A stretch of 64,000 nucleotides of DNA, from NCBI RefSeq assembly GCF_000150275.1, contig NW_002060943.1, positions 5,290,008-5,354,007 on the forward strand, read 5' to 3'. The stretch's first letter is position 1, and each line of letters starts with the position of its first letter. The notes beneath the pieces were generated by a model, which worked only from the letters and a program-made list of their open reading frames with translations, made no database searches and was not told where the DNA came from. A program made the translations under genes and the position numbers. Source of the stretch: Trichoplax adhaerens (lineage: Eukaryota > Animalia > Placozoa). This document shows positions 1-38,473 of this stretch, in pieces.

Positions 1-8246
<8,246 letters not shown>

Positions 8247-12387: not shown

Positions 12388-14765
12388 TAGTATTATCGCT
12401 CCATTTTCGTAAAATACGGTATTTACTGAAGGTTAAGATCCATTTAATGGATTTAAAAGATTCCTATAGAATAGTGACTGATCATTAGCATTCTCACAAG
12501 TTATACAAATATTATAAAAATGCCCGAACTGATGTACTGATGTAATTTATACTATATAAAATTTTTATATCACTTATTTTCGATACCTTTACGGTAAAAT
12601 GTCAATTTAATTGCACCTGCAAGCAAAACATGGATATAAATTATTAGCTGCCTTATTACAGGTTCAAAGTTGAAAATACGCGTACTTACATCAAAGGTCT
12701 TTCTAGATAGGCACTCATATACCATACTTTAAGTTATCTTTAAAATCCACTACCAACCAACTACCGCGATTTTTCAATCACTTTAAAGAATTAGGTAATC
12801 AGCCTTACACTTTTTCTTAATGCCATTATTTCTACTGATAGAAAAAATTTAGTTATCAAATGAAGGATTAGCTATCTTCTGAATTCGAATCAATATAAAG
12901 ATATCCGATATCTGCAGCGTGCACTTACTAAACTTAGAATTTACTATTAACCATAATAACCAAATGGAGAACAGTAAAATTTTGCGCGTAGTTTATCAAA
13001 TAATATAAATTGGATTAAAATTAATTAAAATGCATTTAACCGTAACGTCGGTGAAACTTTTTTCCGCTATATGTGACAAAAACTCATCATTAAAAATCAT
13101 GACGATGCAAGATGGATATAATTTAGTTATATTCGTTATTGATTTAGTTTTGATTAAAGGGAGTTCTGAAAATACTGCAATAAATATGTAACGATGTATA
13201 GGAAATGTCAATATTTAACTCAGTTATTTAAAAAGCATCTCATTCTATCTGGATGAAAATTGCAATTTCTAAAGAGCATATACTTTGACGCTATTAAAAT
13301 TACTGGACAACGATATGGTTACCCGTAATTTTATGTTTCGATTTCGAAGAGCAACTTTTTAAATTTTTATGCCGGCTTATCAAATTACTGAAAACCACGT
13401 CGTTTAGACTGTCATAATATTTATTATTCATTAGGATACTGCAAATCTAATATACGGGCATGGTAAATATAAGAATTACTTAATTACTTTGAAGTGAGAT
13501 TTACGTATTGCATCTGTTAAAAGCAATTTGATTATATTTCCTTTAAATTGTATTCATAGCATTTGATAAAATTTCAATCTAAACTAGATCATGATACGAG
13601 TATATCCTATACCCTAAATCTTATTCATATTGATAGGAACGACTTTAACCTCACGTTAAAACATCTAAATTTGTCTGTTTTATGAAAATCTCTATGTACC
13701 AAGTCAATGTTTACTGTATAGATTCGAATAAATCGTTAAATTTAACATTTATCTGCATAAAATTTTACAAGCTTTTCCAAATAGCAATACATCAGAGCAT
13801 CTTTAAAACTGTCAATTTTACAGTAAAACTACTAATAACGGGAATACTAATATATTTCCTGTGATTATTGTAGCTAAAATCTACATTAATGATGAAATAT
13901 GTAAAATTTACTCTCGATGACTTGCTAGTCATTAATAATTTTATTCGGTCATCACTACGCGGCAAAATTATGTTTTATCCTGTACATCACGTACGATCAT
14001 ATCTTGTGTAGTTTTGATATAAATGATTGCAATAATGTGGTATGAGAAATAAGAAAATTATGTCTCATTCGTGCTCGAACTTTTCCTTAGCCAGCAAAAA
14101 GGACGATGCAATTTCTATCTGATTTAATAATCTGAAAATGGAAAATGTTTCTACAAAAGGCAATAAAAGTTTCGGAAATTTTTCATGCAAAATGGACACT
14201 TGTCATACCTTGAATTGACTAACGCTCAGTCATACCGATTACATTAATTTATCAGTGATATAATGTTTCAAACTATAGATACCTAGACACTACACTATAC
14301 GAGCATTTCAAAAAGCGATCAAATTAACATGTACTTGTCCTAAAGATCTATTTAATCATATAGTACTCACTACTGTATATGCTCCATATCATATGAGAGT
14401 ATAATTTGATAAAATCTGATCATTTTATGACCCTAAATCATTAGTAAACTACGACCACTTCATATAATATTTAATAATTCAGATAGGCGTAAATACCAAG
14501 AATCTTGAGCTTATTTATTAATGAATAAGAAAATTCAAATCATTAGCAATTAGCGCTTCTCGGATCAAGTTTCAATTTACTTGCCAAATTACAGCTGGAA
14601 CATCTAATGAAATTAAATCTAAGAATTATATCTCATTTCTTTATCTTCTATTTAATATTTCGTATTAGCGGTATCTAAATGATATCATGACTACTGAGCT
14701 TTATCAACAAAAACAGTTGCAGAATTAAAAGTATCTCAGCAGTGTGAATTTTCTCTAATAAGTAA

Positions 14766-19676: not shown

Positions 19677-21342
19677 TCAAGCATGCTTTAAAGCTTCCTT
19701 TTTACTAAGATTTGACAATTTATCTTCGTTTTCTTTCACAAACTTTTTAACAGCTTCTGGGTTGACCCGAAATTGATTTCTTAACGCCCAGCCAATGGCT
19801 TTCCTAATGAAAAAGTCTTTTTCTGCGGCACATGCGAGACTATATTTAAATAATTTTTTTTGATCAGTCTTTTCTTTATAATATAACTGGTGTAGAATAG
19901 CCGTTCGTTTAAGCCAAATGTTATTGTCAGCAATCCATTTATCTAGAATAGGGCCTAAGACATCAGGATTGCTTTTGTTCAATTCGCCTATAACTAAATC
20001 ATTAATGAATTCCTTAAAAAGAAGTCATCTTAAATTCAATAAATGATTAATATAATTAAAGATTGATAGCATACAAAGAGCTACACAATCGATCTTGTAC
20101 TTTATAAAGTTTTAACCTCTTGGCGCAAGAGTATCGACACAGTCCCACCAAGACTTGTTCGTTATCATACTTTCAATAACCTCAACACTCTTTTTTAATT
20201 CATCATCCGAATCACCCGTTAATGCAGGTATAGACTTTGTGGCTAATTCTGCAGCAAAGTACTGTTTACAATGAAAGGAATAAAGATGCTGTTATAATAT
20301 TGTATCCATCTAAATGGAAATGAATTACCGACATAGTCATAGGTATATCATTGTCAACCTGATATTCACGCTGGGGTTTCTTCCATAATTCAGTTAATAG
20401 CTGATGATATTCATTAAAGGATAAATCTGGTAAATCTTTGCGAACTTGCTTGTCTATCTTTTGCCGTTCAGGTGAGTTAATCCCTAGTTTTATAATCAAC
20501 ATACATTGAAAAGGTTAAACTCTTATGATTATATTGATCACCATACTGTAGTATAGGAATTACTATCGAAAGGTGCATGAAATAAAATACGAAACGTTCG
20601 TCCGATTCAAAGAGTGAATAATTTTGTTTCTTCTCATTACCTGTATTTACGTGTTATTATCGAGGGGCTAATGCGTTCGTAAAATCCTATCAAAACTAAT
20701 GTGATGCTTGATCATTTATCTTTGCTAAGGCTCTGTTGCATTCCGAGCTCATTTACTAATCCAAATATTCGTACGTACATAGACTGTACCAGGTACTTAT
20801 TTGTGCAAGTCTAATACTCTTCAACTACAACTTGTAAACAGATCAATCTAGCTTCAGTTGGCGTACATAAGAGTACTTGTTGTTACGAAAACGTACTCCA
20901 TAACAGATAGACTCAGCTTGCATTGCATTTTTAATTCCTTAGCATGTACGGATACATTCGACTGGATGTACGTGGATATTGAGCTTAAAACCGATGCAGT
21001 GTAAATTGCTCTTTAATAGGTCAATTTGATCTAAACTATCCTACAACTCCTATAACAACATTAAGTTATTAACCAACATGAACTACCAATTTGCAGTTTA
21101 TAATTATGATAATACAAGATTCAGAAATGATTGGATACCATATAGTAGTATTTACCATAGTATTCGAATTGATCTCGCATGTACTTTTTCATTGTAACCG
21201 CTTTATCTGCATTGGCTTTTTGCTGATAGCCTTTTTCCAATAATTTTAATACTTCAGCAACATTGCGCGTTACAGACTTCATTTTCCTGCTTGTTTTATT
21301 GGTTGAGGCTTTAGTCTTTTGGTTTAATCGTTTGACCGGCAT
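19677..21342 (-). CDS. alkD: AlkD-family (HEAT-like repeat) alkylpurine DNA glycosylase, paralog A; 257 aa; exons 21156-21342, 20359-20483, 20117-20261, 19677-19993
   Basis: Phase-consistent GT-AG introns (phases 1, 0, 1). Motifs MKKYMRDQFEYYGINSPER, LWKKPQREYQY, KSWWDCVD, WLKRTAILHQL, DFFIRKAIGWALR, LSKKEALKH. Confidence 0.92.
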
Positions 21343-23175
21343 TTTAAGTGAACAAAGTCTTGGAGAATAGTGAGGCACGAAGGAATTGCTTTCTGATGAG
21401 CTGCAAGCCTGCAACCTGCAGCAAAGCAGCAATCTGTAAACAACTAATGATTCAATTGAGTGACTACTAATCTTATACTGTAGTCTGGACTAGGTTCTGT
21501 ACGACAGTGTTTTGACTAGAGTAAGTTGCGAGTGAGTGCAATTCTATACTAATGACATAGTGGCGCAATATAGGTCCGACCACAATGCTGACCGACTACA
21601 GCAAAATGGAGATCATGCTTAACCTGCATAAACATGTTTATTTCGAATAGGAGAAACCGCGGGATATCCGTTTCTATGGTTATTATTATGATTGACAAGG
21701 TTACTGAAAACATATTGTGGACAGTGGCATTACACAGTAAAGTAGAGGCGTAAAAGACATAGCGATTAATACGTATTATAATTATATAATTAATAAAGCA
21801 TTGAAGGAGAGTTGACAGAAAATAGAAACCTTCATGTAAGTTTTACAACTAGCTGCTTTTAATAATATAATAAATGATACAGTAAGAAGATTAATAGACT
21901 TACGTATGCTATGTAGACGCAGACATATGTAGCAGTTATAGGCAACTAAGTGCAGGCGCTTGTGCAACTAGAATTCAAAGACGTTTACTACACTCGGCTA
22001 TGAAACATGATAGATTGCAACAGTGCCTACAGTTTCAATATTACAGAACATCAAATGACTTTTACTGTTCTAAAGTTAGTTTTGCAATATACCACTTTAA
22101 TAAAACATACTAGAAGTGATACTGTAGCAGTTCCAGGCAACTGACTCTAGGAACTTGATAGAATACGATTGTAATAAAGGACTAAAAGCAGAGTCCTTTA
22201 TAGCTTTTAGTATGTAACTATATTAATTTACTATGGAAAATACCTAGAAAGTGATAGTATCTTTGTCATCATCTTTTCTTCTTCACTATATATACAGTAT
22301 ATATATATTTTACAAGGTATTATTTAGATTGCTATGGGAATAACCTAAGAGCAATCGCCTAATCTAAAGAAAGGGCGTTTGATAGTCTGTTGAGATTATA
22401 AATGAATTTGACTTAGTAACAAAACCCTATCCATAGAGAAAGGGGAGTTATAACATGACAGTAAAGTACTGTAATACTGGCTATAATCGTACAGTTACCG
22501 TACAACTTCATGCTAAAATGTCAACTGTCAATACTAATGTCATAAAAGTGGTTATAGTTGTCATATAACATACTAATATGAGAATTTGGTTGTAAGAAAT
22601 TTATTCAAAACATGTTGACAAACATGTTAGACTCGAATAGTATAAAAGGGTCTTGGAGGGAGAGCTAGAGTAACCTCTCAGTTTTGTTTTCTAGGATAGA
22701 TTATAGGTCTTTTATTGCTGATCCCTAAGAACCTTCTTATATTATAATAAAGCTATTTTTAGCCTACGACGTTCTCGGTCTCGGTATTACTGTGTACGGT
22801 AGTAGAAGATTAGCTTTAGAGATTGTTAATATTACGCCTCGATTTATTACGAGAAGAAAAAATATCGCAAAGAGTGAGAGTTCGTCATGTAACTTTGTCG
22901 CGTTAATGCGGTGTGGTTACGCTCGCAAATAGGGTATATAGTGCGTATGAACACCGTTAAATTTATGTACATATTAATACAGATTAAAACGTTCGAAAAT
23001 TATCCAACAGTTTGCGGTACTTTGTATATTTTCCGGTGCAACATATTCCATACACCCTTCGGTTATAATGCAAATGTGTAGATCCTATGGATTATAAATG
23101 ATTCATGAAATAGGGTAGATTATCTAACTAATCCATCGTAATGCAGATCACAGTTCCAAAAGATACGCCAAGACA

Positions 23176-24916
23176 ATGCCAGTCAAACGCTTAAATAATA
23201 AAAGAGCTGATGCTAAAGTCAAAAAAATGAAGGGAAATGGTAATACTCTGACAAATAATGTCAGGAAAATTCTAAAGGCTTTGGAAAGTGCATATAAACC
23301 ACATACCAATGCGGAAAAGGCCAAAGCCATGAAGAAATACATGCGTGGCCAATTTGAATATTATGGTAAGTTTGTGCACTATATAGTATGAACGGTAGAT
23401 CATAACGCACCATTTGAGTAGAAGGCATTAAATAATGTGACAGGTAAGAAAATTGACCATTATACATATAATGCTGTATACAGCAATGCAATAATAGTGT
23501 GTACCTCTACAGGATCCTAAACATATTTTTTTGCATGGTTGACATACTGTATATATGTGATTGTGTAAGAGATGGCAACAAATTGAGTATTGCCTCCCGC
23601 TATAAATCGAAATTTGCAATGAAGAACTTAGGCTACCGCGAACCTATTATTAAGTCTGTCCTTTCCAACACTTGTCTGCAGTATGATTTAAAGACTAACC
23701 ATATCTACCATCAGGAACCCACAGTAGCTACACGTCTCTCTCAGTAAACTATTTGTGCAGGTCTAATCATCCTCAGATTATTGACTTGACCAATGTAGGC
23801 AGTTGCAAATGATCACACTTATTGAATAGAGAGAAAGGAACGTAATCCTTGACTTAGATCAGTTAAATGAGTGAGAGATTTATTTTTATTAATGAGGTGA
23901 TCGCGTAGGCGATATTGACCTATCAATATATTTGTGTTATAGCTCAAAGTTCAATGTCAACTTGTAAAATTGATATAAGAAACGCAATACACGTTATTCT
24001 TAAAGGACTATAAGTTACTAAGACATTGCAATAACAACTTTGGGCATTTAATATAATTTAATCCATTATATTCAGGAATAAATTCTCCAGATCGTCGCAA
24101 GATCGATACAGATGTTCGAAAGACAATGCCGGATTTATCATTAACTGAACATCATCAATTACTAAATGAATTATGGGAACTACCTCAGCGTGAATACCAG
24201 GTAAGGATTGTTGCTTCTGTAGTTTATTCATATTACTGCCAGCGATCAATAATTAATTGATGCAATTACTAAATTTAACATAATTTCCGTTGATTAGCAT
24301 TTTGGAGCTGAACTTGCTAGAGACTCTGTAAAAATTTTAACAGGTGATTCCGATCAAGATTTAAGAGAAAGTGTTACCGTTATTGAAAATATGATAATCA
24401 AAAAATCATGGTGGGATTGTGTTGATCTTCTAGCGCCAAGAGGTTATAAATTACTGTAACGTCTTTACTAGCTGCTTTAAATCATAAATTGACAATAATC
24501 ATAAAAATGTAACAGGATTAATAAGACTACTATAAAAATGCAATTTCTGAAGGGCTTACAGAATCTTGCAGGTAAAATTTTAAATTTCTTCTGCTTTAGT
24601 TATTGGTGAATTCAATAGAATCCAGCCTGAAGTTATGGGTCCTATTCTAGATAAATGGATTACTGATGATAATATCTGGCTTAAACGAACTGCTATTCTA
24701 CATCAGCTATTCTATAAAGAAAATACTAATCAAGAGAAATTGTTTAGATACAGCCTTGCATGTGCTAAAGAGAAGGAATTTTTTATTAGAAAAGCAATAG
24801 GCTGGGCATTGAGAAATCAATTTCGAGTCAATCCGTCAGCAGTTAAGAAATTTGTTAAAGAAAATGATAATAAGTTGTCTTACTTAACCAAAAAGGAGGC
24901 ACTAAAACATGCTTAA
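23176..24916 (+). CDS. alkD: AlkD-family DNA glycosylase, paralog B; 258 aa; exons 23176-23365, 24076-24200, 24298-24442, 24600-24916
   Basis: Same intron positions and the same 125/145/317-nt exon sizes as paralog A. Motifs YMRGQFEYYGINSPDR, KSWWDCVD, WLKRTAILHQL, EFFIRKAIGWALR. Confidence 0.92.
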
Positions 24917-26427
24917 CAGCTAGCCATACAGTCGATTTCGTACATTTTAATGATTTGCACACGCTATGATGTTTAAATGTAACATGAGTGCTAACGCGAT
25001 ATCAGTACTGATTTAGAAAGCCAAAAATGTGTATATATATGTATACTCTAATTGCTGCTGATACTAAAATTATTTATCTCAATCGATACTACCAATTTTA
25101 ACTGCTGCTTTTGCAAAATCCTTCAGCTCCACTAGATCAATTCATATAACATCTACTTAATAAGATTACGTCCTGAAATGTTCCTGATAATCTGTAATAT
25201 TAAGATGGACCGTTAAACTTGTTTTCTACTATTTAAAACAATTACTGGTCTAGTGTGCTCCTATTTTTATATTTGAAACATTTGAATCTAAATGTACAGC
25301 GACTTGAACTATAAGAGATTCTGTTTCTGCTATTGGAGCAACTCACTCACGGTATGAGATTGAAATTTATTAAACTTCTTCAATGCCTAGTAAGTAGGTT
25401 TTACTCAACAAAGATCTTGTACATCAGCAATCACGATATTTCGATTTATTGTACTATTTGAAATCATGTTTCTCTAAATATTTTTTGTGGATTTGATACC
25501 TGAATAGCTATTAATGCCATACTGCAATTACTTAATTAACATTACTACAAATCAAGTACTTTATTATCGCGGTGTCAAGGAGCTACAACTAGACCATTAA
25601 CCGGATACAAACATAAATTGTGATCTTAGACAACTGTAACAAAGTATGGTGCGTTCCTTTTCTGACTTAGCATTTGTGCCATGTTCTGTAAATATGAATT
25701 TCAGTCTTTAAAGCTATCCAGCTGCCCTTCATTCAACGCCCAACAAAGCAGATGGGCTAACCTAGCATTTTTACCACTATTTGAATGAGTTTTATAGCCC
25801 TGAAGTTCTTAACATTCTGGTCAAATTAACCTAAGTAATAAGTAATAATTACACCTCCTCAGATGATTATGTACTGTGATTACTTTTACTCGATAGAGAG
25901 CTTAACAAAGAGTTTTATGTAGTCTATTACACTTTTATTATAAATAACCTTAAAGGCATTATCGTGTTATATAATCAGAACGAGTAAGTATATCTGAATG
26001 TGATGTTGAAAGTGCATTAATCAATTAATAAGTAAAAGATGTAGTAAGATATACAATTAAACCGATCTTATAAACAACAGAATCACTGAAAATATCGGTA
26101 AAAATTAGTGGATATTACTTTGCACTACTAATTCAAACAACCTGAGCATCTACCACGCTGCTAAACACGTATAAAAGTACAATTACAATACTGCATTTAT
26201 ATTATCGGATTAAGATAGCTCATTTTAAGAATAAGAAAATATATCATGGTAAAGATATGAAATAAACATATGAAGATGTTACTGGCAAGTGTCGATAACA
26301 ATATCGAAAAACTGTTATGATAGCTATGTCAAGAATTGACGATTGCATATACCTATAATGCCAATTATAATAACAACAGAAAATTTCCCAGTAATTACAG
26401 CTAGGTTTATTTTTTTCCTGACCCTTT

Positions 26428-29158
26428 TCATATTTGAAGATGTAAGTCGCCACAAGCATAAGATGAACGACCAAATCGAAGCCCTGGTAGACGATGCCAT
26501 TTCTTTTCAACAAGATCAAATGCATCGACATTGGTTAAATTATGTTTTCCATCATTGCCACCAATAATAATATAATAATTACCAATAACTTTAGCTTGGC
26601 AATTATCCCTGCGGGACGGCATTTTGGTTAATAATTTCCACTTGTTAGTTCTAATATCGTACCATTCAACAGTATCTAGTTTTTGTACACCATCAAAACC
26701 ACCAGCTACAATAATATAATCATGCCACGTTGCTGCAGCTGGAAAAGTACGTGGTTGACACATTTTATTTAATATTTTCCATTGTGGTTTCTCCCAAGCT
26801 TTATGACTAAGTTGATACGATTCTACACTGGATAATGGTAGTCCATCATGCTCACCTTGTCCACCAACAACAACTAAGTGATTCTTGGTGGTGACACAAG
26901 CAGATCCGTAACGTCTTGAAATCATAGCTGGCAGGGAAGTCCGACTCCAGACACCAGAGTTATAGAAATAAACTTCAACTTTCTTCAATGCTTCGGTCCC
27001 TTTTAAACCTCCAACAATAATCAGTCGATTATTCCATACGCAAGAACAGCTGTATTTCTTCGGTTCTTTCATGCATTCTAAAGTATCCCATTTCATCGTT
27101 TTTAAATTGCAATAGCGCGTACGATTGCTTAAGCCATCTGTTTCAACAAATCCACCACAAACAATAAATTTATTAGTTAGAATACCACCACTAGCACCAT
27201 AACATCCTGCTTCCATAGGGTAGAGAGTAGTCCATGAAATTGTAGTAGAATCAAATACTTCTACATGATTACACAAGTACCCGTCATTAATTCCACCAGC
27301 AATGAAAATATGATGATTCTTTTCTAATTCGATCTCGGAGTTAATATTACTTTTCGAATTATCTGCTTGCTGATTATTGTCTCCTCTTACATTCATGACT
27401 TTTATTTGATCCTCTATCTCTACGGTTGGATAGAAAAAGGCAAAGAAATTAATTCGAAATAAAATAGTTTAACCTTAGAGTAAAATAGCGAATGGGACTA
27501 TAATATAGGATAATTAATTATAATTTTAAATAATCATCTTATAATTCTTGAAGCTGCTGCATGATATTCTAGCTCCAATTGTAAATTATTATCAATTCCA
27601 ATTATGTTATTTGCATGATAATAAGACATATTTTGCGTTAATTGCACAAATATATCAATACTGCATATTGTGAATTAACATCTTATTCCTCATATAATAA
27701 CTTTCTACATTTGTACCAATAAATGATCAGACACAGTTCCTCATATTACAAAATTTCGCTATATAACCGGGCTATAATATGTCTCAACTCAATATCATGC
27801 CGTTTATATCGTAATATCTTATAGAATATCTTTAAATTTGCTTTAAGTATTATAGACCGACTATATATCGTAAATCGATGTCTTTGCCCTTCATATGATA
27901 ACTTTCTGCATTTACATTCACAAATGATCAGACACAGTTCTTCACTCAGCAAGATTTCCGTTATACGGTATAGGTATAATGTATCATAAATCAAAATCAT
28001 GGCGTTTTATAACGCAACATCTTAAATTAATTATATCTATGAATTTGCTTTAAATTTCATATAACTACCGGTACAGAATATCGCCAAGCTATATCCTACT
28101 CTTTATAGGATACCGCTAACTGTTTATATTAGTGTCAAATAAATGATACGATTTGCTTTAAACGTCATGTAGCTACTGAATATAGAAAAATCCATATCTT
28201 ATCCTTGGTAATATAACTCTTTATATTTGTATCAGTAAGACAATTAAATTTAGTTTCTCATATAGCAAAATTTTCGCTATGTAGTACGAGTATAATATGT
28301 TAAAATCAAAATTATATCGTCTATACCATAATATCTTACAGAACATCCGTGGATGATGGTGTAAAGACTACATCAAGATAATTAGATCAGTCTGCCTGAT
28401 ATGGTAACGGAAACAACAAATTTTCTGTTATATTTGAAAACATACAAGTGTTCGTGTCATAATAGGTCTCACTATTGGGTATCATGGTGTTCACATGACA
28501 AAATCTTGCGTATACTGTACGTCTATAAAATATCTGTGTCTTTTCATTAAGATGATCGAATATAAATTTTATCCAAAGGAAAAATTTCCTCTAGAAATTT
28601 TTGCTATAGTAAATTTTCATTACAGGTATCATGCGAAAGATACGAAGGCTGTGGTTCTGATCGTCTTAGACCTTATTAAAGTTAAGCAAATCTGTAATTC
28701 TTTTCAACAGGTGCTAGTATTCAATAGCTATATTACAGTTATACTTTCGACATGATCAATTCTTTACCTCTAGGTGATACTTGCTGGCTTGTAGTTTTGG
28801 AGTCATTATCGGTATTACCCTGCCATGGGAGGATAGACTGGCTATCTTCGGGATCATGGATATTACCATCATGATCTGATTGGTTTGTAGCAAATAACTC
28901 TTGTAATTCAGGACAGACTGTCAGCAATGCTTCGATAAAGATGGATAGCTTCTTATTGGATTTGCTGACAGCTAAATCTAGAATTTTACTTGCTTGAGCC
29001 GCAGGTGTAGATTCCCCTTTAACCTGTTGACAGTCTTTGATAGCAAAAAATTTCTTATTATACAACTGTGTTATACCAGGTAAGATATTTTTCTTTAGAC
29101 AATTGATCAATCGAATTCGATGGCTAGATATTATCGACACAGTCTGATCACGATCCAT
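26428..29158 (-). CDS. CARD-Kelch protein, ~460 aa; exon 1 28768-29158 (CARD + linker), exon 2 26428-27419 (six Kelch repeats)
   Basis: Exon 1 has a CARD-like helix pattern (IISSHRIRLINCL...LY...CQQVKGEST...QASKILD...FIEALL...PELQELF) and ends AGAG|gtaaag in phase 1. The acceptor tttctttgcctttttctatccaaccgtag|AG ATA GAG is phase 1 and in frame with the Kelch ORF. That ORF has six hydrophobic-GG blades (HIFIAGG, FIVCGG, LIIVGG, LVVVGG, IIVAGG, YIIIGG). Confidence 0.8.
27700..28340. repeat. Degenerate ~200-300-bp tandem repeat inside the CARD-Kelch intron
   Basis: caaatgatcagacacagttc recurs at ~27720 and ~27921. atttgctttaa and caaaattt(t)cgcta blocks also recur. Confidence 0.6.
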
Positions 29159-30590: not shown

Positions 30591-32026
30591 GTAAGCCTAT
30601 GGATTATATTACTACACAGATCTGTACTCATATTTAATTTATTACCGTTACCGAGTAGAAATTCCGTAATTACTCCAGTATACTTAACTCATAGTTATAA
30701 TTTTTATAGACTGTATGCTTGTACATGATGACTAAAATGCAGAGACATATTTCTGTTTTGATACTGTAATCTTTGAGATTAGGGCTTCGATAAAACAGTT
30801 AACACAATATGTTTATATCTTATGCTGTTCGTCATTAATTTACTTATCCTTTTTGATTGATATATGATGATATGCCTGCTAGTATAGATATGCCTGCTAG
30901 TATTCATGATATGCCGTTATAGAATATTATTTGCTATTATTTTCTACTTATAACAGTAGTTAAATCTATAGGAAACTTTCGTTCAGTACTCAAGCTCTAG
31001 CGCATTTTCCTAGCTATACTATAAGGAAATTTTATCTCAAAATCGTAATTATAATTTACAATCATTCCACATTATTTTAAAAGTATGGAATATATCTGAC
31101 TAGTTGGTTAACAAGTCTCTTAATTGATGAATTCATTGCAATTAAAATAGCTAGTGGGAAGACAATATGTGATTACTAAGCACACAAGGCCTGCAGATAA
31201 TCTAAAACAATAATTTATCACCTTTTATTTCCATACCGGTAGCTCAATTGTAAATTGTTTAACACTACTCGCAAGCAGAAAGAAATAATAATTTTTAAAA
31301 GCATTTAAAACTTCAATGAAAATTACAAGCTATGTTATAAATATATGAGTTCATTAGGAAATAAATAAAATCTAAATGATTTTAAGATAGATAAGCGATA
31401 TCAGGTAAACAGAAAATCTAGAACGTGAACACGGCATATTTACTCTGATAGTAGTATAATTACACCTGTTTAGGTAATATCAATTTAAACCAGTATTCAA
31501 ATGAAATACAGTAGATGGTTAAACGATCCATTTTACTAACCCTGAGTTATGTAAAAAACTAAAGAATGAATTATTTTTTCAGAATATGCATTAATAAGAC
31601 GAGTTACATCTCCCCAATTAATTACCTAGCTAGTCAAACTAGTATAGTATCAGTTCCATTTATTTCCTTTAATTAATTACTGGTTCCTAATGTATTTCGG
31701 TATAGATTAATGACTATCAAATTAATCTTCAGTTCATATTATCTCTAGGACTTATTCCAAATTAATAAATAATTTATAGATAGAAAAAAATCACAAATTT
31801 TACATAGCTATAAATAGGTTATCTCCAGTAACCTCCATTTTGTCGTGTAACAAATTATCAATCAGTATGACAGATCGATATGTTCTAATAATTTATTTTT
31901 CTTGCCATTTTATCACAAACTTATAGTAAGTTTATAAAAATTGAATGATGGGTCACTTGTTTACGAATGAGCTGTTTGATAGCTATAAGTAAAAGACCTC
32001 TCTCGCTTTCTTTTATTATACTGTAG

Positions 32027-35000
32027 TTAGCAACATCGACTGTTAGATCTTCTAAACCGTCTTGGTTTAAGGCTATCTACTTTGATAGAATCATTGATAT
32101 TGTTAGACGATATAGTATCTTCTTCATTCCTTGCTTCAAGTAAGTGTCTAGATTAATAAAAGTATAAAATTTTGTTAATTGCAAGATCAGCTACGCAATT
32201 ATTTTAAACCAGTCGATAGACTCATCGATCTGCAAACACGCACTAAAAATTTTCATCACCTTGCTAGTTGATGACATGTTTCAAAAACATGCTCTCCAGT
32301 CCTTGCACTTGTTTCAGCATACATTGCATTATGATCCTGTACAATTATAAGATCGTCAATAAAAGAAATTTAAGAGTAAAAAATCAAGTTATACTCGTCT
32401 AGTAACTTATAAATTTGAATTAGACTAATTATTTGATAAAGATCTTACGAAAGCCATCTGGAATCCATCTTCTATGCTAACTTTTCTTTGATCCGATATA
32501 TCTAACTTATTACCAACCATTATAAGTAAAGGTGGATTTTCTACCCAGTCCTAGTTATTATTATCAACATAGAGTAATTGGTTATTGTTAACATTATACC
32601 AATTCTATTAAGATATTTATAGAAATGGTATGAAAGTGAATTTTCGAATTTTTTATAGCTACAATAAGATGATCGCATCGGTACTAAAAGCAAGAAACGA
32701 CCAAGCAGTAGGTGTATCATGTTTGAAACTAAACCCTTGAAACTATGAAACTTTTAACCTACCTCAATATGTGAAAGCCAAGTCGGAATGTTTTCGAATG
32801 AGTCTTTGCTGGTAATATCAAACAGGGCAATTATTCCATCGGCTCGACGAAAGTAGGACCTAGGTAAGCTATCAAACCTACGTCAATAGTAAAATAGGCA
32901 AACATCAATCTTGGATATCCTGTGTTCCAAAAAGTGTTTCAGATATTTGCAACAGATATAGGGTAAAACATTATTCTCAATAATAGACACCATATCAGAA
33001 TTCGAACATAAAAGCTTTCCGTTAGATACAGTATGCATTTACTTATCATAATTTGTAAATTCTAATTAGCAGTATTGAGTTAATTCTTTACCTTTCTTGA
33101 CCAACGGTATCCCAAATTTCTAGCATAACGACTTTATCATCAATAATAACAGGTTTATTATGCAATCCAGGATCTGTTCATTGTGGATTAAAATAATCAT
33201 CTTAAAAGGTTAGAGTTTAATCTTTTAATCATTTTACAGAAATTAGCTCCTTTGTCTTAATAATTAAAATTATTCACTGAGCAAAGTCTGCTTTAGAGAT
33301 ACGCAATAGATTAATTTATTTAATCCTATTTGACTATCTAATACATAGGAATACAACTTGGATCTAAAGGTTATAAAATTGCAATAACATAGGTAATGAT
33401 TTTCAGAATAAATTATCTAATAATTGCGAAAGTAATGTTGGCAGATTATAGAGTTAACTATGATAGAAAGAATCAATTGTAACATTAGTTGAGTGATTTC
33501 ATTCTAGATTATCTTTTCGTCATGGGCATTAGAAAGCAATTAATGATTACACCTCCCGATATCTAAGGTACGAGTGAAGATGAAATTCTTTCATACTTCT
33601 AATGGTAACAGATTTAATTATAAAGCTTAAGTCAGAAGTAGTTCATGTGTACTTGCCAATTGTAACCCGCTGGAACTGATCGAAGTTATGATGGCAAAAT
33701 CGATTAATAAAACTGGATTTTCCAACACCAGAATCTCCTACCAGGATAATTTTAAATATTTTCATTGCTGTCATCATGGTCACATTAACCTAAGTTAGAT
33801 AGAAATAATAGAAATTCTGCAATAAATTTATGATGTTGTGAAAAATAAACCGTGGATTTACGAATTAAAACAGTTAAATTGTAAGAAATACATATCTTTC
33901 ATCTCATTTACCTCGACATTTGTCTCAACAACATCTGTTAAACCATCAACTGTATCTTTTTTATCGGAATTCATCAATTTATCCTTTCTATTTTGTTGCC
34001 ACGATGCGCTAGTTAGTAGTGAGCGTACATCATCACTCACTTTAACCTGGGAAATTTCTTCGTGAGGATCAGACTGTTTATCTTCATTATCCGTTTGATT
34101 TAATAATACATTTTCATCATTATCTAGCTGCCAGCCCTGTAAAAATCATTAAACAGCTTTTATGGATGCTAAAAATTCGTATATATTAAGTTACGACTAG
34201 GGTCCATTTAGGATCAGAAAATGATTCAGAGTAAGCTTTTACTTCTCAATATCTAAATTATACGAAAATATCATCATTGGATTATTGTCCAAAATGAAAA
34301 AAAGGAACAAGAATTCACCTCTTCCTGATATCTTTTCAATTTTGCCGTTCGAGCTAGTTTAATAAATTCGTCCCATCCCTGAATAATTGCTCTGAATGTT
34401 AAAGAATTATTTATTTATTAATTTACAAGAAATAATTAACTATTTTGAAATTGTTATGATGAGAGCAGCCATTCATAATTACGATGTTTACACTTTGACA
34501 TATACTGACTTTGCTATGATGAAATTAATCTTCTGTTATTACGATATTTATATTTAACTTATGCTAAAGTTTGCGATATGATAAAATCAATCTTATGGTA
34601 TTGCGATATTTATACTGTAACCCGCGATAAACTTTATTGTATGATAATAGCAATCTTACGATATCGCGATATTTATATTTAGCCAATGTTAAATTTTGTC
34701 ATAATAAAATCGTACTGTATATCATTACGATATTTGTACCTTAATCCTTACTATACTTTGTTATATGATAAAAGCAATCTTATATTATTATTTATATACT
34801 GTAACCCATGCTAAAGCTTGTTGTGACATAATCAATTTTAAGTTATTATGATATTAATACTATACATTAACCCAAGCCAAACTTTAACATATGATAAAAT
34901 TAATTTTAAGTTGTTACGATATTAATACTTCAACCCAGGCCGAATTTTAACATATGATAGAATTAATTTAAGTCATTACGATATTTATACTTTAACCCAT

Positions 35001-38000
35001 GTTAAATTCTGCTAAGCTAAAATTAATGTTACGTCATTACAATATCTACATATACTGTAACCTATGCTAAACTTTATCATACGATTAAATTAATCTTTAG
35101 TTACCTATTAGCGATTCCACCCGAAGTTGAAACGACCAGAGGTTCGACATATTTGTTTCGATTAAATAATTTATTATAATACGATTTCTTCTTTATAGGA
35201 GATGTTTCTGTTTTGATAACAACTGCCTGTAATGGAGTTGTATTCTCAGGTTGATTATCATCCGTTGAGCCTCTATTGATTTGAATTCTTTCACTACGCA
35301 GAGTAATGAAATTGAAAAGGTCGAAATTTAATTTATACTCTCCAATGTTATTTTAAGTTTTAGAAACTACGGATAATCCTAAATTAGAAAACTTCAAAAG
35401 CAGGCGTGAGAGTATTTATTACGATTAATACTTCACATATTATGCTAATAACTCTATTTTGGAATAGTTCTTAAGATCTCATGCTCGTTGATATTGACTA
35501 CTGTACACCGGATAACAAGTTGAAGCAAGTGCTAATGTTTTTAGGGGTAAAGAGAATCCTCCTATCTATCGGGTTATTCGAAGCTAGGAATTAAAACTTC
35601 CAGAATTCACTCATCGAAGCAAATCGAATCAATTAGTCAAATCGGAAAATAGATGTTACTGACTAGTAACAAAACACAAAAATAATTCAAAACTGATGTG
35701 TTACTAAACAGTAGCAAGATCAAGACTAACCCAAGCTCTTCAATCTACCAGCACACCAGCTGTAATTTCTACAGGCTTTTGCACGCAATTTATTCTCTAA
35801 AGTATAGCACATGAAGAAATAGCTAGTTGAACTAAATTATACTACTGGATATAAGGAACTGTATCTAAATGTTGATTGTTAGCGCTAACGTTAGCTATTA
35901 CATCAGCAATGAATAACATGACAGGTGCAAAATAATCTCAAAGACTTTGAAGGTTAGCGACTGTAATTTCATGATAGTGATGAAGAATATGAATTAGGAA
36001 TTAATACCTTATGATTTGTGTTCTATAGCAATTTTCAATATTACGTACTAGCATGAATTTTATAGTACATGAATATGTTATAGGTGGGTTTTCTAGCAAG
36101 CTATTGATTGGAAGTTTTTCTGAGATTGTACAAGGTACGAAATTAAATTAAATCTGTTAAAGAACAAAAATTATAGGATAAAACATTTTTAGATGTCTCT
36201 TAATGAGATGCTGTCCATATCATATGCATATTTATATACATTGTATATACATATACATATATATTTATCGATAGATAGACTTAAAATGTAGATAAATTTC
36301 CTCAAATAATTCATATATGGTAGTATGGAAGAAATCTTTCATTGATCTATTTCTTGCAATATTCTCGCATATATCACTAGACTGCAAAGGGATTTTCTTA
36401 AAGGGTTCAATAATGTAAAATCTATATATGGTAGAACAGAAGCAATAAATCACATTTGTAATATTCTAGTATGCAGATAATGTGGAAGGATTTTCCCTTA
36501 TAAAGATTTAGTAACGGGAAATTCATAAATGGTAGAACACAAGCAATCCCTCATTAATTCCCTTTTCGCAAAATTCTCGTATATACAGTACTGCAGATAT
36601 TGTGGGAAGATTTTCTCAAAAGATTCAATAACATGAAATTCATAAAAGTAAATGGTAATACGCAAGCAATCCTTCTTGGATTCCCTTTTTTGCAATACTA
36701 GGATAAAACTATGCTCTAATACTTACTCTGTCCTGACTGCAATGCAGATTAAACTCTTCTTGAAATTCTTTAGTATTTTTTCACCTTGTTCTTTTCTTTG
36801 AATAATAGTATCGTTGATGGAATAGATAATATCGCCAACTTTAAGCGGACTCTGTTCTGCTAAACTCCTCGATGTAATCTGTAGCAATCAAGTTGTAAAT
36901 TCATTATTAACAAGAAAGCAGCAGGGTATTTTCCACATTATACACAACATCAATGAGTTACCCTAAATCGTCTATTAATTATAGAAGAGTCAATTTGAAA
37001 ATAGAAATAACAACATACATAAGAAATATAGACGATGTGATCTTCATTTTCTCCCAAAACAAGGCCATAGCCACGTTTTCCTCCACGTAATAAAAGAGTT
37101 CTAATATTATTTAAGTCTTTATTCAAGCCTAGAGCCATTTTGGTTTTAGGTGCAATTTCTCGAATTAATTGTTGAAATGTTTGACGACTTTGAGCATCAT
37201 CATAGCTTGATATCATAATGTCTTCAGGTTTAATGACATTTTTCTCCTTCTCTTCTGCTGGATCGCTTGGTACCCAACCCTGGATAAGATTTTTACTTTT
37301 TCCTTCACCATCAGGTGATTTAGATAACGATTTAATAGCCCTAGTATGCCGAATTAATTCTTTTCTTTCCAAAACGATATCTCGCATACTTTTTTTCGAA
37401 GTTTTGCTGCTATTACTCTCTGATTCTGTACTAGCTGGTTGTTGTTTTGGGGGAAGTTCAACCAGTTCATCGACTAATTTTCGAAAGCGAGGGCTATAGG
37501 AATTTAATCCTGTTACTGCGTTAACAACGTCTTCATCTTCTGATGGCTTGCTTTTATTTTCGCTCAGTGATGATACTTCCCTTGTGGTGGAAATGACTTT
37601 TGTAACTTCTTGACTTTGATGTACAGATTCTTCTTGGCGCGATAATATCGAGCTATTGATTTGATATTGGTCATTTTCTTGCGTGGTTGTACTCACACCA
37701 TCCGCTATGGGTTGCTTCTCGTCCAGGTTAGATAGATCCATCGATGTATTTTCAGGTACTATTTGGCTTGGTGTTGTTGTAATTTTAACATCTTCTTCTG
37801 TAGTTTGAACTGATTTCTTCTCCACATTGGTTAAAGTATTGGAGAAAAGCGAATTCTTGCTGTTGATTTCATCCACTATTGCCAACTTAGTGGGTGAGAT
37901 ATCAGTGCCATTTTGATCAGCTAATTTATGCCGTTCTTGGACAGTAAGACATTCTTCCGTTTGGTATTCCATTTTAGTAATGATAACTTCCGTTTTAACC

Positions 38001-38284
38001 GTTTCTGTTCTTTGGATAACTTGTCTTTGGACTTGTACAGTATCGGAATCATGATTTTTATCTTTCGCAGTTCGGATTTCGGTCTGTTCGACAGGTAAAT
38101 TCGTTACTACTGAAATGTTATCGCCTGTCAATAAATCAGTTGGAACGATGGCATGGATTCCATTTTGTAATATTTGTTCCTTTTGCTTAGTAGCAGTTAA
38201 ATTTTGAATTTCATCGGCTAACTGATTATTTTCCATCTGATTTCCATTTTGTAGATGATGATCATGTACAGGTGATTGATCCAT
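32027..38284 (-). CDS. Large Rab GTPase with N-terminal disordered region and PDZ domain (PDZ-Rab), ~844 aa; exons 37019-38284 (5' end uncertain), 36727-36878, 35105-35293, 34319-34391, 33912-34136, 33657-33789, 33092-33173, 32763-32877, 32449-32550, 32260-32336, 32027-32147
   Basis: Ten consecutive introns are phase compatible with no stops. PDZ: RGGKRGYGLVLG...VYISY|ITSRSLAEQSPLKVGDIIYSIND. Rab: FKIILVGDSGVGKSS, WDTVGQERF, YFRRADG, VGNKLD, ETSARTG and a C-terminal RCC*. The start may lie further upstream (acceptor near 38317; the ORF is open to 38473). Confidence 0.83.
34475..35097. repeat. Degenerate minisatellite, ~60-bp unit, about 10 copies (intronic)
   Basis: Recurring ttacgatatttata...aacccatgctaaa...atgataaaattaatctt. 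Confidence 0.85.
36290..36700. repeat. Degenerate ~110-bp tandem repeat (intronic)
   Basis: Recurring aattcata.atggtagaaca..aagcaatcc and gcagata.tgtgg.agatttt. Confidence 0.65.
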
Positions 38285-38473
38285 TGGTTGCTTTAAAATT
38301 ACTTTCGAAATTTTCCCTATGCAAAGTAAATTGACCATTAATATGTTAGCGTTTGCTACAGCTGAAAGTATTTCTTCAGTCTTTCCTACACTAGACTTGA
38401 ATACTAATTTATGATTAACAGTCACAGATGCCATTACATATAATGAGAAATGATCCACTAAAATGAAGGCCAT

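What the first reader, a model, noticed from the sequence alone, without database searches (positions are those of the whole stretch)
26428..29158. CARD fused to a six-bladed Kelch propeller: candidate sensor/adaptor with an unusual architecture
Seen: two ORFs listed separately are linked by a phase-1 donor (AGAG|gtaaag, 28768) and a phase-1 acceptor with a long pyrimidine tract (27420). The join is in frame and gives CARD - acidic/polar linker - 6 Kelch. Known: animal Kelch propellers usually pair with BTB/BACK. CARDs pair with NACHT/NB-ARC, caspase, helicase or kinase domains and signal by homotypic assembly; Apaf-1 uses WD40 propellers plus an ATPase. Inference: a minimal ligand-binding propeller wired directly to a death-fold, with no ATPase, could act as an innate-immune or cell-death receptor or a caspase-substrate adaptor. 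The phase-1 intron fits an exon-shuffling origin. The CARD call is by eye against the Apaf-1/ASC pattern.
Basis: partly seen in the sequence, partly recalled or inferred. Interest (0 to 1): 0.8.

Follow-up and report, generated by a model that had tools for sequence, protein, structure and literature searches.

The report
Placozoan CARD–Kelch propeller fusion gene
This is a real, conserved two-exon gene of the simple animal Trichoplax that joins a cell-death signalling domain (CARD) to a KLHL-type Kelch propeller; it is already in GenBank and UniProt but has never been studied, and it probably links a bound protein to the animal's many Apaf-1-like death-signalling proteins.

Summary
On the minus strand, exon 1 (29158-28768) ends AGAG|GTAAAG in phase 1. 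Exon 2 (27419-26428) follows a pyrimidine-rich ..CCGTAG| acceptor. Together they give 460 codons.

- **Domains.** Exon 1 passes Pfam CARD (36.4 bits, cut-off 23.9). It folds as a six-helix bundle with the kinked helix 1, and its nearest structure is the Apaf-1 CARD. Exon 2 is a complete six-bladed propeller of Keap1/KLHL type. There is no BTB, BACK or NTPase.
- **Already annotated.** The window is Trichoplax adhaerens scaffold_1. The joined model is TRIADDRAFT_51845 (XP_002108672.1, UniProt B3RL18), with a Trichoplax sp. H2 ortholog, RDD45019.1.
- **Conservation.** Two more distant placozoan lineages keep both exons, their order, the splice positions and phase 1. dN/dS is about 0.1 in each exon, while intron and flanks are unalignable. 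The join is therefore well supported without transcripts.
- **Rarity.** It is single-copy. An exhaustive CARD search found no Kelch-bearing relative outside Placozoa, and no paper mentions the architecture. The ESM Atlas lists a 61-member sponge CARD+Kelch cluster, which I could not test.
- **Function.** This is inferred: a CARD-tethered substrate or ligand adaptor for the placozoan CARD network.

An ordinary kind of domain shuffling in a new combination; moderate interest. The scan earlier noted CARD-RCC1 and CARD-ARM genes in this genome.

The parts
28768..29158 (-). Exon 1 (391 nt): start codon, CARD and the first part of the acidic linker; ends in phase 1 at AGAG|GTAAAG
   Evidence: 100% identical to residues 1-130 of XP_002108672.1. 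dN/dS 0.12 against a distant placozoan.
28880..29152 (-). CARD domain (residues 3-93): six-helix bundle with split helix 1 (H3-12/H14-23, H25-34, H40-47, H52-64, H68-81, H83-93); net charge +5
   Evidence: Pfam PF00619 at 36.4 bits, above the 23.9 cut-off. AF2 pLDDT about 90. Foldseek top hits are all CARDs, best Apaf-1 CARD 1cy5 (TMt 0.84, rmsd 1.9). Atlas structure search TM 0.71-0.80, to CARD clusters only. Charge.
28820..28840 (-). QSILPWQ motif (residues 107-113) inside the otherwise variable, disordered, acidic linker
   Evidence: Identical in four placozoan lineages, while the surrounding linker is about 57% identical. Function unknown.
27420..28767 (-). Phase-1 intron (1348 nt), GTAAAG...polypyrimidine-CCGTAG; contains degenerate ~200-nt direct repeats (27690-28350)
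   Evidence: 54% identity to the distant placozoan, against 73-80% for the exons. No Pfam-bearing ORF inside it.
26428..27419 (-). Exon 2 (992 nt including TGA): end of the linker, a short helix across the junction (residues 129-142), and the whole Kelch propeller
   Evidence: 100% identical to residues 132-460 of XP_002108672.1. dN/dS 0.09.
26440..27315 (-). Six-bladed Kelch beta-propeller (residues 166-457), KLHL/Keap1 type, closed by the C-terminal strand 452-457
   Evidence: Kelch_1 E 2e-43. PDB sequence hits Keap1, KLHL20, KLHL12, KLHL3 and IVNS1ABP at E 1e-35 to 1e-29. AF2 pLDDT above 90. Foldseek TMt 0.93-0.95, rmsd 1.6-1.8, to Keap1/KLHL17/KLHL12/KLHL20.
26406..26411 (-). AATAAA, candidate polyadenylation signal, 17 nt after the stop codon
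   Evidence: sequence only.

Best explanation
Shown: this is TRIADDRAFT_51845 of Trichoplax adhaerens, a single-copy, two-exon gene conserved across placozoans. It encodes a 460-aa protein with no Pfam domain other than CARD and Kelch. The parts, in order, are:
- an N-terminal basic CARD of Apaf-1-like geometry;
- a disordered acidic linker of about 70 residues carrying one invariant motif, QSILPWQ;
- a complete KLHL-type six-bladed Kelch propeller.

It has no BTB/BACK, so it cannot dock to Cullin-3 as KLHL proteins do. It has no NB-ARC/NACHT, so it cannot assemble by nucleotide exchange as Apaf-1 and NLRs do.

Inferred: it works as an adaptor. As in Keap1 and the KLHL proteins, the top face of the propeller would bind a short peptide of a partner protein. 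The CARD would tether that cargo, by homotypic CARD-CARD contact, to CARD-bearing hubs of the placozoan cell. Per Kamm 2019, those hubs are the roughly dozen Apaf-1-like CARD/NB-ARC proteins, the CARD-caspases and the TIR-CARD proteins. The fusion would thus bring a target to, or modulate, a death or defence signalling platform. The acidic linker next to a basic CARD could mask the CARD until the propeller is engaged (speculative).
For: Gene and join:
- Exon translations are 100% identical to public 460-aa models from two independent annotations.
- Donor, acceptor and phase 1 are conserved in H2 (L001), in an ENA metagenome placozoan (L002) and in a Logan placozoan (L027).
- Exon identity is 73-80% against 54-57% for intron and flanks.
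- dN/dS is 0.12 for exon 1 and 0.09 for exon 2, with dS above 1.
- The in-frame residues IE(D/G)Q upstream of the first Met of exon 2 are conserved, while that Met is not.

Domains:
- CARD.
- Propeller.
- No other Pfam family on the full protein.

Context:
- The nearest paralog of this CARD in the genome (L007, 24% identity) sits just upstream of NB-ARC exons on the same strand, as do three other CARD exons.
- Kamm et al. 2019 (PMC6321704) report 12 Apaf-1 homologs, two CARD-caspases and two TIR-CARD proteins in placozoans.
- This CARD has the highest net positive charge of the 21 T. adhaerens CARDs compared (+5; the Apaf-1-like paralog L007 has +4), while many of the others are acidic. That fits charge-complementary CARD pairing, as known for Apaf-1 and caspase-9.
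Against: - The 460-aa product appears in the protein collection only from genome annotations, not from read assemblies.
- No partner, ligand or phenotype is known.
- Peptide binding by the top face is assumed from KLHL structures. I could not map conservation onto the model because coordinates are not exported.
- CARD pairing cannot be predicted from charge alone.
- The gene does not sit in any immune or death gene cluster. Its neighbours are a PDZ/Roc-Ras gene and AlkD-like genes.
Confidence: 0.55

Rival explanations
1. NTPase-free sensor. A ligand, microbial or danger-derived, clusters several propellers. The clustered CARDs then nucleate a CARD filament or disc that activates CARD-caspases directly, so the protein acts as a receptor rather than a passive adaptor.
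For: The layout (CARD, flexible linker, repeat sensor) copies Apaf-1/NLR without the ATPase. The genome appears to hold other CARD-plus-repeat-scaffold genes without an NTPase: a CARD exon lies 2 kb upstream of RCC1 repeats on the same strand, and earlier scan notes describe CARD-RCC1 and CARD-ARM genes.
Against: It is single-copy and strongly conserved (dN/dS about 0.1), with no sign of the expansion or diversifying selection typical of pathogen receptors. There is no oligomerisation module. Known Kelch propellers of this type bind endogenous degron-like peptides.
Confidence: 0.2
2. Negative regulator or decoy. The CARD caps or sequesters Apaf-1-like or caspase CARDs, as ICEBERG, COP, ARC and other CARD-only proteins do, while the propeller sets its location or its own turnover. 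Retention of the intron would give a 139-aa CARD-only product (stop 9 codons after the donor).
For: There is a single CARD with no effector domain. An in-frame stop follows shortly after the donor in all three lineages. Foldseek also matches ICEBERG and ARC CARDs.
Against: The propeller is under purifying selection as strong as that on the CARD, which argues that binding by the propeller is central and not accessory. There is no evidence for intron retention.
Confidence: 0.13
3. Substrate receptor of a ubiquitin ligase reached through the CARD instead of BTB/Cul3. The KLHL-derived propeller would still select degradation substrates, and the CARD would dock to a CARD-bearing E3 (of the cIAP/BIRC2-3 type).
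For: The nearest relatives of the propeller are all Cul3 substrate receptors. The Atlas structure search lists BIRC3-type CARDs among the matches.
Against: I did not look for, and do not know of, a placozoan CARD-bearing E3. The idea rests on analogy only.
Confidence: 0.07
4. Two separate genes, a CARD-only protein and a Kelch-only protein starting at Met139, merged wrongly by gene predictors and by the reader.
For: No transcript was seen here. Exon 2 has its own ATG at 27396, and prokaryote-style callers list the two ORFs separately.
Against: The Met is not positionally conserved, while in-frame coding sequence upstream of it is. The donor and acceptor positions and phase 1 are kept in four lineages despite saturated synonymous divergence. 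Order, strand and spacing (1.24-1.35 kb) are also conserved. Two independent annotation pipelines join the exons.
Confidence: 0.05

Closest known systems
Apaf-1 / CED-4-type apoptosome scaffolds (CARD - NB-ARC - WD40 propellers)
   Same: N-terminal CARD with the closest structural match of all PDB entries (1cy5/5juy, TMt 0.84). The closest paralog in the genome is the CARD of a CARD-NB-ARC gene. A C-terminal beta-propeller acts as the presumed binding module.
   Different: No NB-ARC ATPase, winged helix or HD2. One Kelch propeller instead of two WD40 propellers. 460 aa instead of more than 1200. No evident oligomerisation engine.
KLHL / Keap1 BTB-BACK-Kelch Cul3 substrate adaptors
   Same: Six-bladed Kelch propeller with C-terminal strand closure. 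24-28% identity and rmsd 1.6-1.8 A to Keap1, KLHL12, KLHL17 and KLHL20. The H2 ortholog is even auto-named 'Influenza virus NS1A-binding protein-like'.
   Different: BTB and BACK are absent and replaced by a CARD plus a disordered linker, so there is no Cul3 docking or BTB dimerisation. No Trichoplax KLHL gene is a close paralog (best 34% over one or two blades).
Sponge 'Caspase recruitment/Kelch' protein cluster in the ESM Atlas (61 members, representative 409 aa)
   Same: Same two Pfam families (Kelch_1 in 97% and CARD in 82% of members) and similar length. It is the top feature-space neighbour of the Trichoplax protein (0.89, 183/256 shared).
   Different: I had no sequences, so homology of the fusion is untested. 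An exhaustive phmmer search with the CARD exon found no Kelch-bearing protein outside Placozoa at E<=1e-3. The fusions may therefore be very old and diverged, or independent.
Other death-fold shuffling products of invertebrates, e.g. amphioxus CAH1272998.1 (CARD x3 - B-box - NHL propeller) and the placozoan CARD-RCC1 gene
   Same: A CARD joined to a beta-propeller binding module without an NTPase.
   Different: Different propeller folds (NHL, RCC1) and extra domains. No sequence relationship beyond the CARD family.
CARD-only regulators (ICEBERG/COP, ARC)
   Same: A single CARD with no enzymatic effector. They are structural matches in Foldseek.
   Different: Those lack any large binding domain. 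Here two thirds of the protein is a conserved propeller.

Membership tests
CARD (Pfam PF00619, death-fold superfamily) | Sequence match to the family HMM above the curated gathering score | tested here: met
   36.4 bits against a cut-off of 23.9, E 5.5e-9, profile positions 3-81 of 85. 33.0 bits in the full-length protein. The orthologous exon P0036 scores 37.6 bits.
CARD (Pfam PF00619, death-fold superfamily) | Six-helix antiparallel bundle with helix 1 broken into H1a/H1b | tested here: met
   AF2 with a 24-sequence alignment gives pLDDT about 90 over residues 1-90. Helices are 3-12 | 14-23, 25-34, 40-47, 52-64, 68-81 and 83-93. Nearly all Foldseek matches are CARDs (the few exceptions are de novo designed or unnamed proteins), with Apaf-1 first. 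This is a prediction, not an experiment.
CARD (Pfam PF00619, death-fold superfamily) | Homotypic CARD-CARD binding or assembly | not testable with these tools
   Needs pull-down, two-hybrid or a multimer model. Only net charge (+5) was computed.
KLHL (BTB-BACK-Kelch) Cul3 adaptors | Six-bladed Kelch propeller | tested here: met
KLHL (BTB-BACK-Kelch) Cul3 adaptors | N-terminal BTB/POZ domain (PF00651) | tested here: not met
   No BTB hit at E<=0.01 on the full-length protein. The N-terminus is a CARD. No further coding ORF lies in the intron.
KLHL (BTB-BACK-Kelch) Cul3 adaptors | BACK domain (PF07707) between BTB and Kelch | tested here: not met
   No BACK hit. The region is a disordered acidic linker with one short helix.
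Apaf-1 / NLR STAND receptors | Central NB-ARC or NACHT NTPase | tested here: not met
   No such Pfam hit. NB-ARC hits in the genome lie elsewhere.
Apaf-1 / NLR STAND receptors | N-terminal death-fold effector plus C-terminal repeat sensor | tested here: met
   CARD plus Kelch propeller. This is a resemblance of layout only.
Sponge CARD-Kelch cluster (ESM Atlas) | Detectable sequence homology of both halves to the sponge proteins | tested here: inconclusive
   The Atlas feature hit of 0.89 is only a lead. Three word searches and one exhaustive CARD search returned no sponge CARD-Kelch protein.

The most novel reading that the evidence does not exclude
CARD-Kelch, together with the placozoan CARD-RCC1 and CARD-ARM genes and the sponge CARD-Kelch cluster, represents an ancient class of NTPase-free 'repeat-scaffold + CARD' receptors of early animals. 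Ligand capture by the propeller would directly seed CARD assemblies on Apaf-1-like or caspase partners. That would be a simpler wiring of cell-death and immune sensing, one that predates or parallels the STAND-ATPase receptors.
Probability: 0.12. Interest if true: 0.75.

Novelty: new variant of a known kind. Interest (0 to 1): 0.4.

Why it matters
Placozoans lack canonical NLRs with LRRs, RIG-I-like receptors, cGAS-STING and RIPK. They have instead expanded the Apaf-1-like proteins (Kamm 2019). How signals reach that CARD network is unknown.

This gene is single-copy and strongly conserved, and it hard-wires a peptide-binding propeller to a CARD. That makes it a concrete, small and testable entry point: find what the propeller binds and which CARD it pairs with.

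It also shows that a KLHL-type propeller can be redeployed away from Cullin-3, which bears on how death-fold adaptors arose by exon shuffling in early animals.

The gene model itself is not new, and death-fold shuffling in invertebrates is well known, so the value is moderate.

Tried and rejected
- **Word-index protein searches.** I ran three: exon 2, the public full-length record P0012, and a 40-sequence CARD+Kelch profile. Only the placozoan cluster carries both PF00619 and Kelch. The first search was cut at 1e-10, which was too strict.
- **Exhaustive phmmer of exon 1 against 1.84 billion representatives.** It gave 10 hits. Four are LRR false positives (P0037, P0039, P0040, P0044). Four are multi-CARD proteins without Kelch.
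- **PDB sequence search with the CARD.** Only NOD1 at E about 1. The fold search was needed.
- **Literature.** No paper for the accession numbers, none for 'CARD-Kelch' phrases, and nothing relevant for sponge or Trichoplax plus CARD plus Kelch. The text and supplements of Kamm 2019 do not mention Kelch or this protein.
- **Paralogs.** There is no second CARD-Kelch and no close copy of either half in the genome.
- **TIR six-frame search of the genome.** No hits, although a TIR-CARD protein exists (P0080), so that search is insensitive to split exons.
- **Tandem Repeats Finder on the intron.** Nothing. The repeat finder then showed degenerate ~200-nt repeats.
- **DxxD|S motifs in the linker as a conserved caspase site.** Rejected as evidence. 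They are not in the same alignment column, and about 1.5 are expected by chance in so acidic a linker.
- **Not done, by the operators' rule.** Window searches were exon by exon, and full-length analyses used the public record P0012 by reference.
Full report
**1. What is in the sequence**

On the minus strand an ORF starts at ATG 29158, with an in-frame TGA six codons upstream. It runs to a donor ..CCTAGAG|GTAAAG at 28768/28767.

A 1348-nt AT-rich intron ends in a pyrimidine tract and CCGTAG at 27420. The second ORF continues in frame from 27419 to the TGA at 26430-26428.

Exon 1 is 391 nt (phase 1) and exon 2 is 992 nt, giving 460 codons with a split codon G|AG (Glu131). AATAAA follows the stop by 17 nt.

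A second AG lies 6 nt into exon 2 and is also in frame. The exact acceptor therefore needs transcript data, but the frame does not depend on it.

**2. Which genome, and is the model new?**

The assembly has 105,631,681 bases in 1414 contigs. The window lies on a 13,260,704-base contig.

Each exon translation is 100% identical to the matching part of a public 460-aa protein. That protein is EDV29470.1 / XP_002108672.1 / TRIADDRAFT_51845, UniProt B3RL18 'CARD domain-containing protein', of Trichoplax adhaerens, on a contig of the same length.

Trichoplax sp. H2 has the ortholog RDD45019.1, auto-named 'Influenza virus NS1A-binding protein-like protein A', with three amino-acid differences.

So the joined model is already annotated in two genomes by independent pipelines. 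No paper in the searchable library mentions these accessions or a CARD-Kelch architecture. The placozoan immunity survey of Kamm et al. 2019 does not mention it in text or supplements.

I ran no junction-spanning search. The window was searched exon by exon, and full-length analyses used the public record by reference.

**3. The domains**

*CARD.*
- Exon 1 hits Pfam CARD at 36.4 bits (cut-off 23.9; E 5.5e-9; residues 9-88).
- I modelled it with an alignment of four placozoan orthologs and 20 paralogous CARD exons of this genome.
- AlphaFold2 gives a confident bundle (pLDDT about 90 over residues 1-90) with helices 3-12/14-23, 25-34, 40-47, 52-64, 68-81 and 83-93. This is six helices with the CARD-typical break in helix 1.
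- Foldseek against the PDB returns almost only CARDs. Apaf-1 is first (1cy5, TMt 0.84, rmsd 1.9 A, 22% identity), followed by NOD1, NLRC4, CARD8, NLRP1, caspase-9, RIP2, CARMA1, ARC and ICEBERG.
- The Atlas's own model gives the same answer.
- The refutation criterion 'no death-fold hit or no six-helix bundle' is therefore not met. The CARD call stands.
- The CARD has net charge +5, the highest of the Trichoplax CARDs compared.

*Linker.* Residues 93-165 are acidic (net -8) and disordered in the model, except for a short helix (129-142) across the exon junction. Within the linker, QSILPWQ (residues 107-113) is invariant in all four lineages.

*Propeller.*
- Exon 2 is a full six-bladed Kelch propeller: Kelch_1 E 2e-43, six hydrophobic-GG blade motifs, and C-terminal strand closure.
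- Its nearest solved relatives by sequence are Keap1, KLHL20, KLHL12, KLHL3, KLHL2 and IVNS1ABP.
- By structure it matches the same group at TMt 0.93-0.95.

No BTB, BACK, NB-ARC, NACHT or any other family is present.

**4. Is the join real?**

I found no transcripts. The comparative evidence is strong, however.

Besides H2 (L001), two more divergent placozoan lineages carry the same arrangement:
- L002 is an ENA metagenome contig with exon 1 at 879-1263 and exon 2 at 2504-3498.
- L027 is a Logan contig with exon 1 at 318-702 and exon 2 from 2029.

In both of these:
- The CARD exon is 385 nt, so the phase is still 1.
- The donor sits at the homologous Arg codon: AGAG|GTAAAG in L002 and AGGG|GTAAGG in L027.
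- The acceptor TAG| is at the homologous place.
- The intron is 1.24-1.33 kb.

Between H1 and L002, nucleotide identity is 73% in exon 1 and 80% in exon 2. It is 54-57% in the intron and flanks.

dN/dS is 0.12 for exon 1 (0.11 for the CARD part) and 0.09 for exon 2, with dS above 1.

The first Met of exon 2 is not positionally conserved, whereas the in-frame residues upstream of it are. I put the 'two separate genes' reading at about 5%.

**5. Relatives and rarity**

The gene is single-copy.
- The next-best propeller in the genome is 34% identical over about 110 residues.
- The next-best CARD scores 22 bits. That CARD (L007, contig C1390) lies just upstream of NB-ARC exons on the same strand, so it belongs to an Apaf-1-like gene.
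- Three other CARD exons are arranged likewise.
- One CARD exon lies 2 kb upstream of RCC1 repeats.

Outside Placozoa:
- An exhaustive phmmer search of exon 1 against 1.84 billion representatives found only LRR false positives and multi-CARD proteins, none with Kelch. One of these is an amphioxus CARDx3-B-box-NHL protein.
- Three word-index searches found no other protein with both families.
- Against that, the ESM Atlas lists as nearest feature-space neighbour a 61-member, sponge-dominated cluster auto-named 'Caspase recruitment/Kelch' (409 aa; Kelch_1 in 97%, CARD in 82% of members; score 0.89).
- I could not obtain those sequences. The architecture therefore probably exists in sponges too, but whether it reflects one ancient fusion or convergence is open.

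**6. How it most likely works**

*Shown.* The protein has a protein-interaction death-fold at one end and a KLHL-type peptide-binding propeller at the other, joined by a flexible linker, and both ends are under purifying selection. It has no catalytic, oligomerising or Cul3-docking module.

*Inferred from established knowledge of the families.* CARDs act by homotypic pairing, for example Apaf-1 with caspase-9 through complementary charged faces. KLHL propellers bind short peptides on their top face. The protein would therefore bridge a propeller-bound partner to a CARD-bearing hub. Placozoans offer about 12 Apaf-1-like proteins, two CARD-caspases and two TIR-CARD proteins as candidates (Kamm 2019).

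I rate this adaptor model, together with the shown architecture, at 0.55.

| Rival reading | Confidence |
|---|---|
| True ligand sensor that seeds CARD assemblies | 0.20 |
| CARD decoy or negative regulator | 0.13 |
| Substrate receptor for a CARD-bearing E3 | 0.07 |
| Two separate genes | 0.05 |

Strong conservation and single-copy status argue against a fast-evolving pathogen receptor.

**7. Comparison and verdict**

It works like a hybrid of an Apaf-1-type CARD effector end and a Keap1/KLHL-type substrate-binding end. It is a member of neither family, because the ATPase and the BTB/BACK were tested and are absent.

It is a new variant of a known kind, namely death-fold adaptors made by domain shuffling, which are common in non-bilaterian and invertebrate genomes. 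The gene model is already public and uncharacterised.

The phase-1 intron, conserved over deep placozoan divergence, fits exon shuffling but does not prove it.

Interest is moderate (0.4). This is a good, compact experimental handle on placozoan CARD signalling, not a surprise to specialists.

Noticed in passing
window 27690-28350 (inside the intron): Three to four degenerate direct repeats of about 200 nt (about 78% identity; families D1-D5). TRF does not detect them. The intron is otherwise unalignable with the distant placozoan contig.
   Followed up: partly
window 28820-28840 (-), residues 107-113: QSILPWQ is invariant in four placozoan lineages inside an otherwise fast-evolving acidic linker. 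It may be a short linear docking motif, perhaps for the protein's own propeller.
   Followed up: partly
window 28769-28879 (-); L002 and L027 linkers: Each ortholog's linker holds a DxxD|S tetrapeptide (DPED|S, DTTD|S, DVAD|S) that looks like a caspase site. They are not in the same column, and about 1.5 are expected by chance in so acidic a stretch.
   Followed up: partly
G000:C1409:3636863-3640622 (-): A CARD exon lies about 2 kb upstream of at least three RCC1 repeats on the same strand. This agrees with an earlier scan note on a CARD-RCC1 gene and suggests a set of CARD-plus-repeat-scaffold genes in this genome.
   Followed up: partly
G000:C1390:121757-125119 (-), also C1411:7879819-7882725, C1407:1070142-1074190, C1394:375919-376968: CARD exons immediately upstream of NB-ARC exons (Apaf-1-like genes). 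The C1390 CARD has the strongest CARD score in the genome (79 bits) and is the nearest paralog of the CARD-Kelch CARD.
   Followed up: partly
P0041 (CAH1272998.1, Branchiostoma lanceolatum): An amphioxus protein with three CARDs, B-boxes and an NHL propeller, labelled TRIM71. It is another CARD-plus-propeller combination without an NTPase.
   Followed up: no
window about 19700-24900 and 32000-38300; L001:1-3203 and 10243-14731: In the H2 annotation the neighbours of the gene are a 938-aa PDZ(faint)/Ras/Roc protein and two DNA_alkylation (AlkD-like) genes. The same features were flagged by other first-stage notes on this window. There is no immune gene cluster around the CARD-Kelch gene.
   Followed up: no
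G000, many small contigs (e.g. C1321:5969-6244, C1361:36787-37062, C1375:218110-218385): About a dozen near-identical NB-ARC C-terminal fragments, each with one in-frame TAG, sit on small contigs. They may be a repeated or pseudogenised NB-ARC family, or an intron at a fixed place.
   Followed up: no
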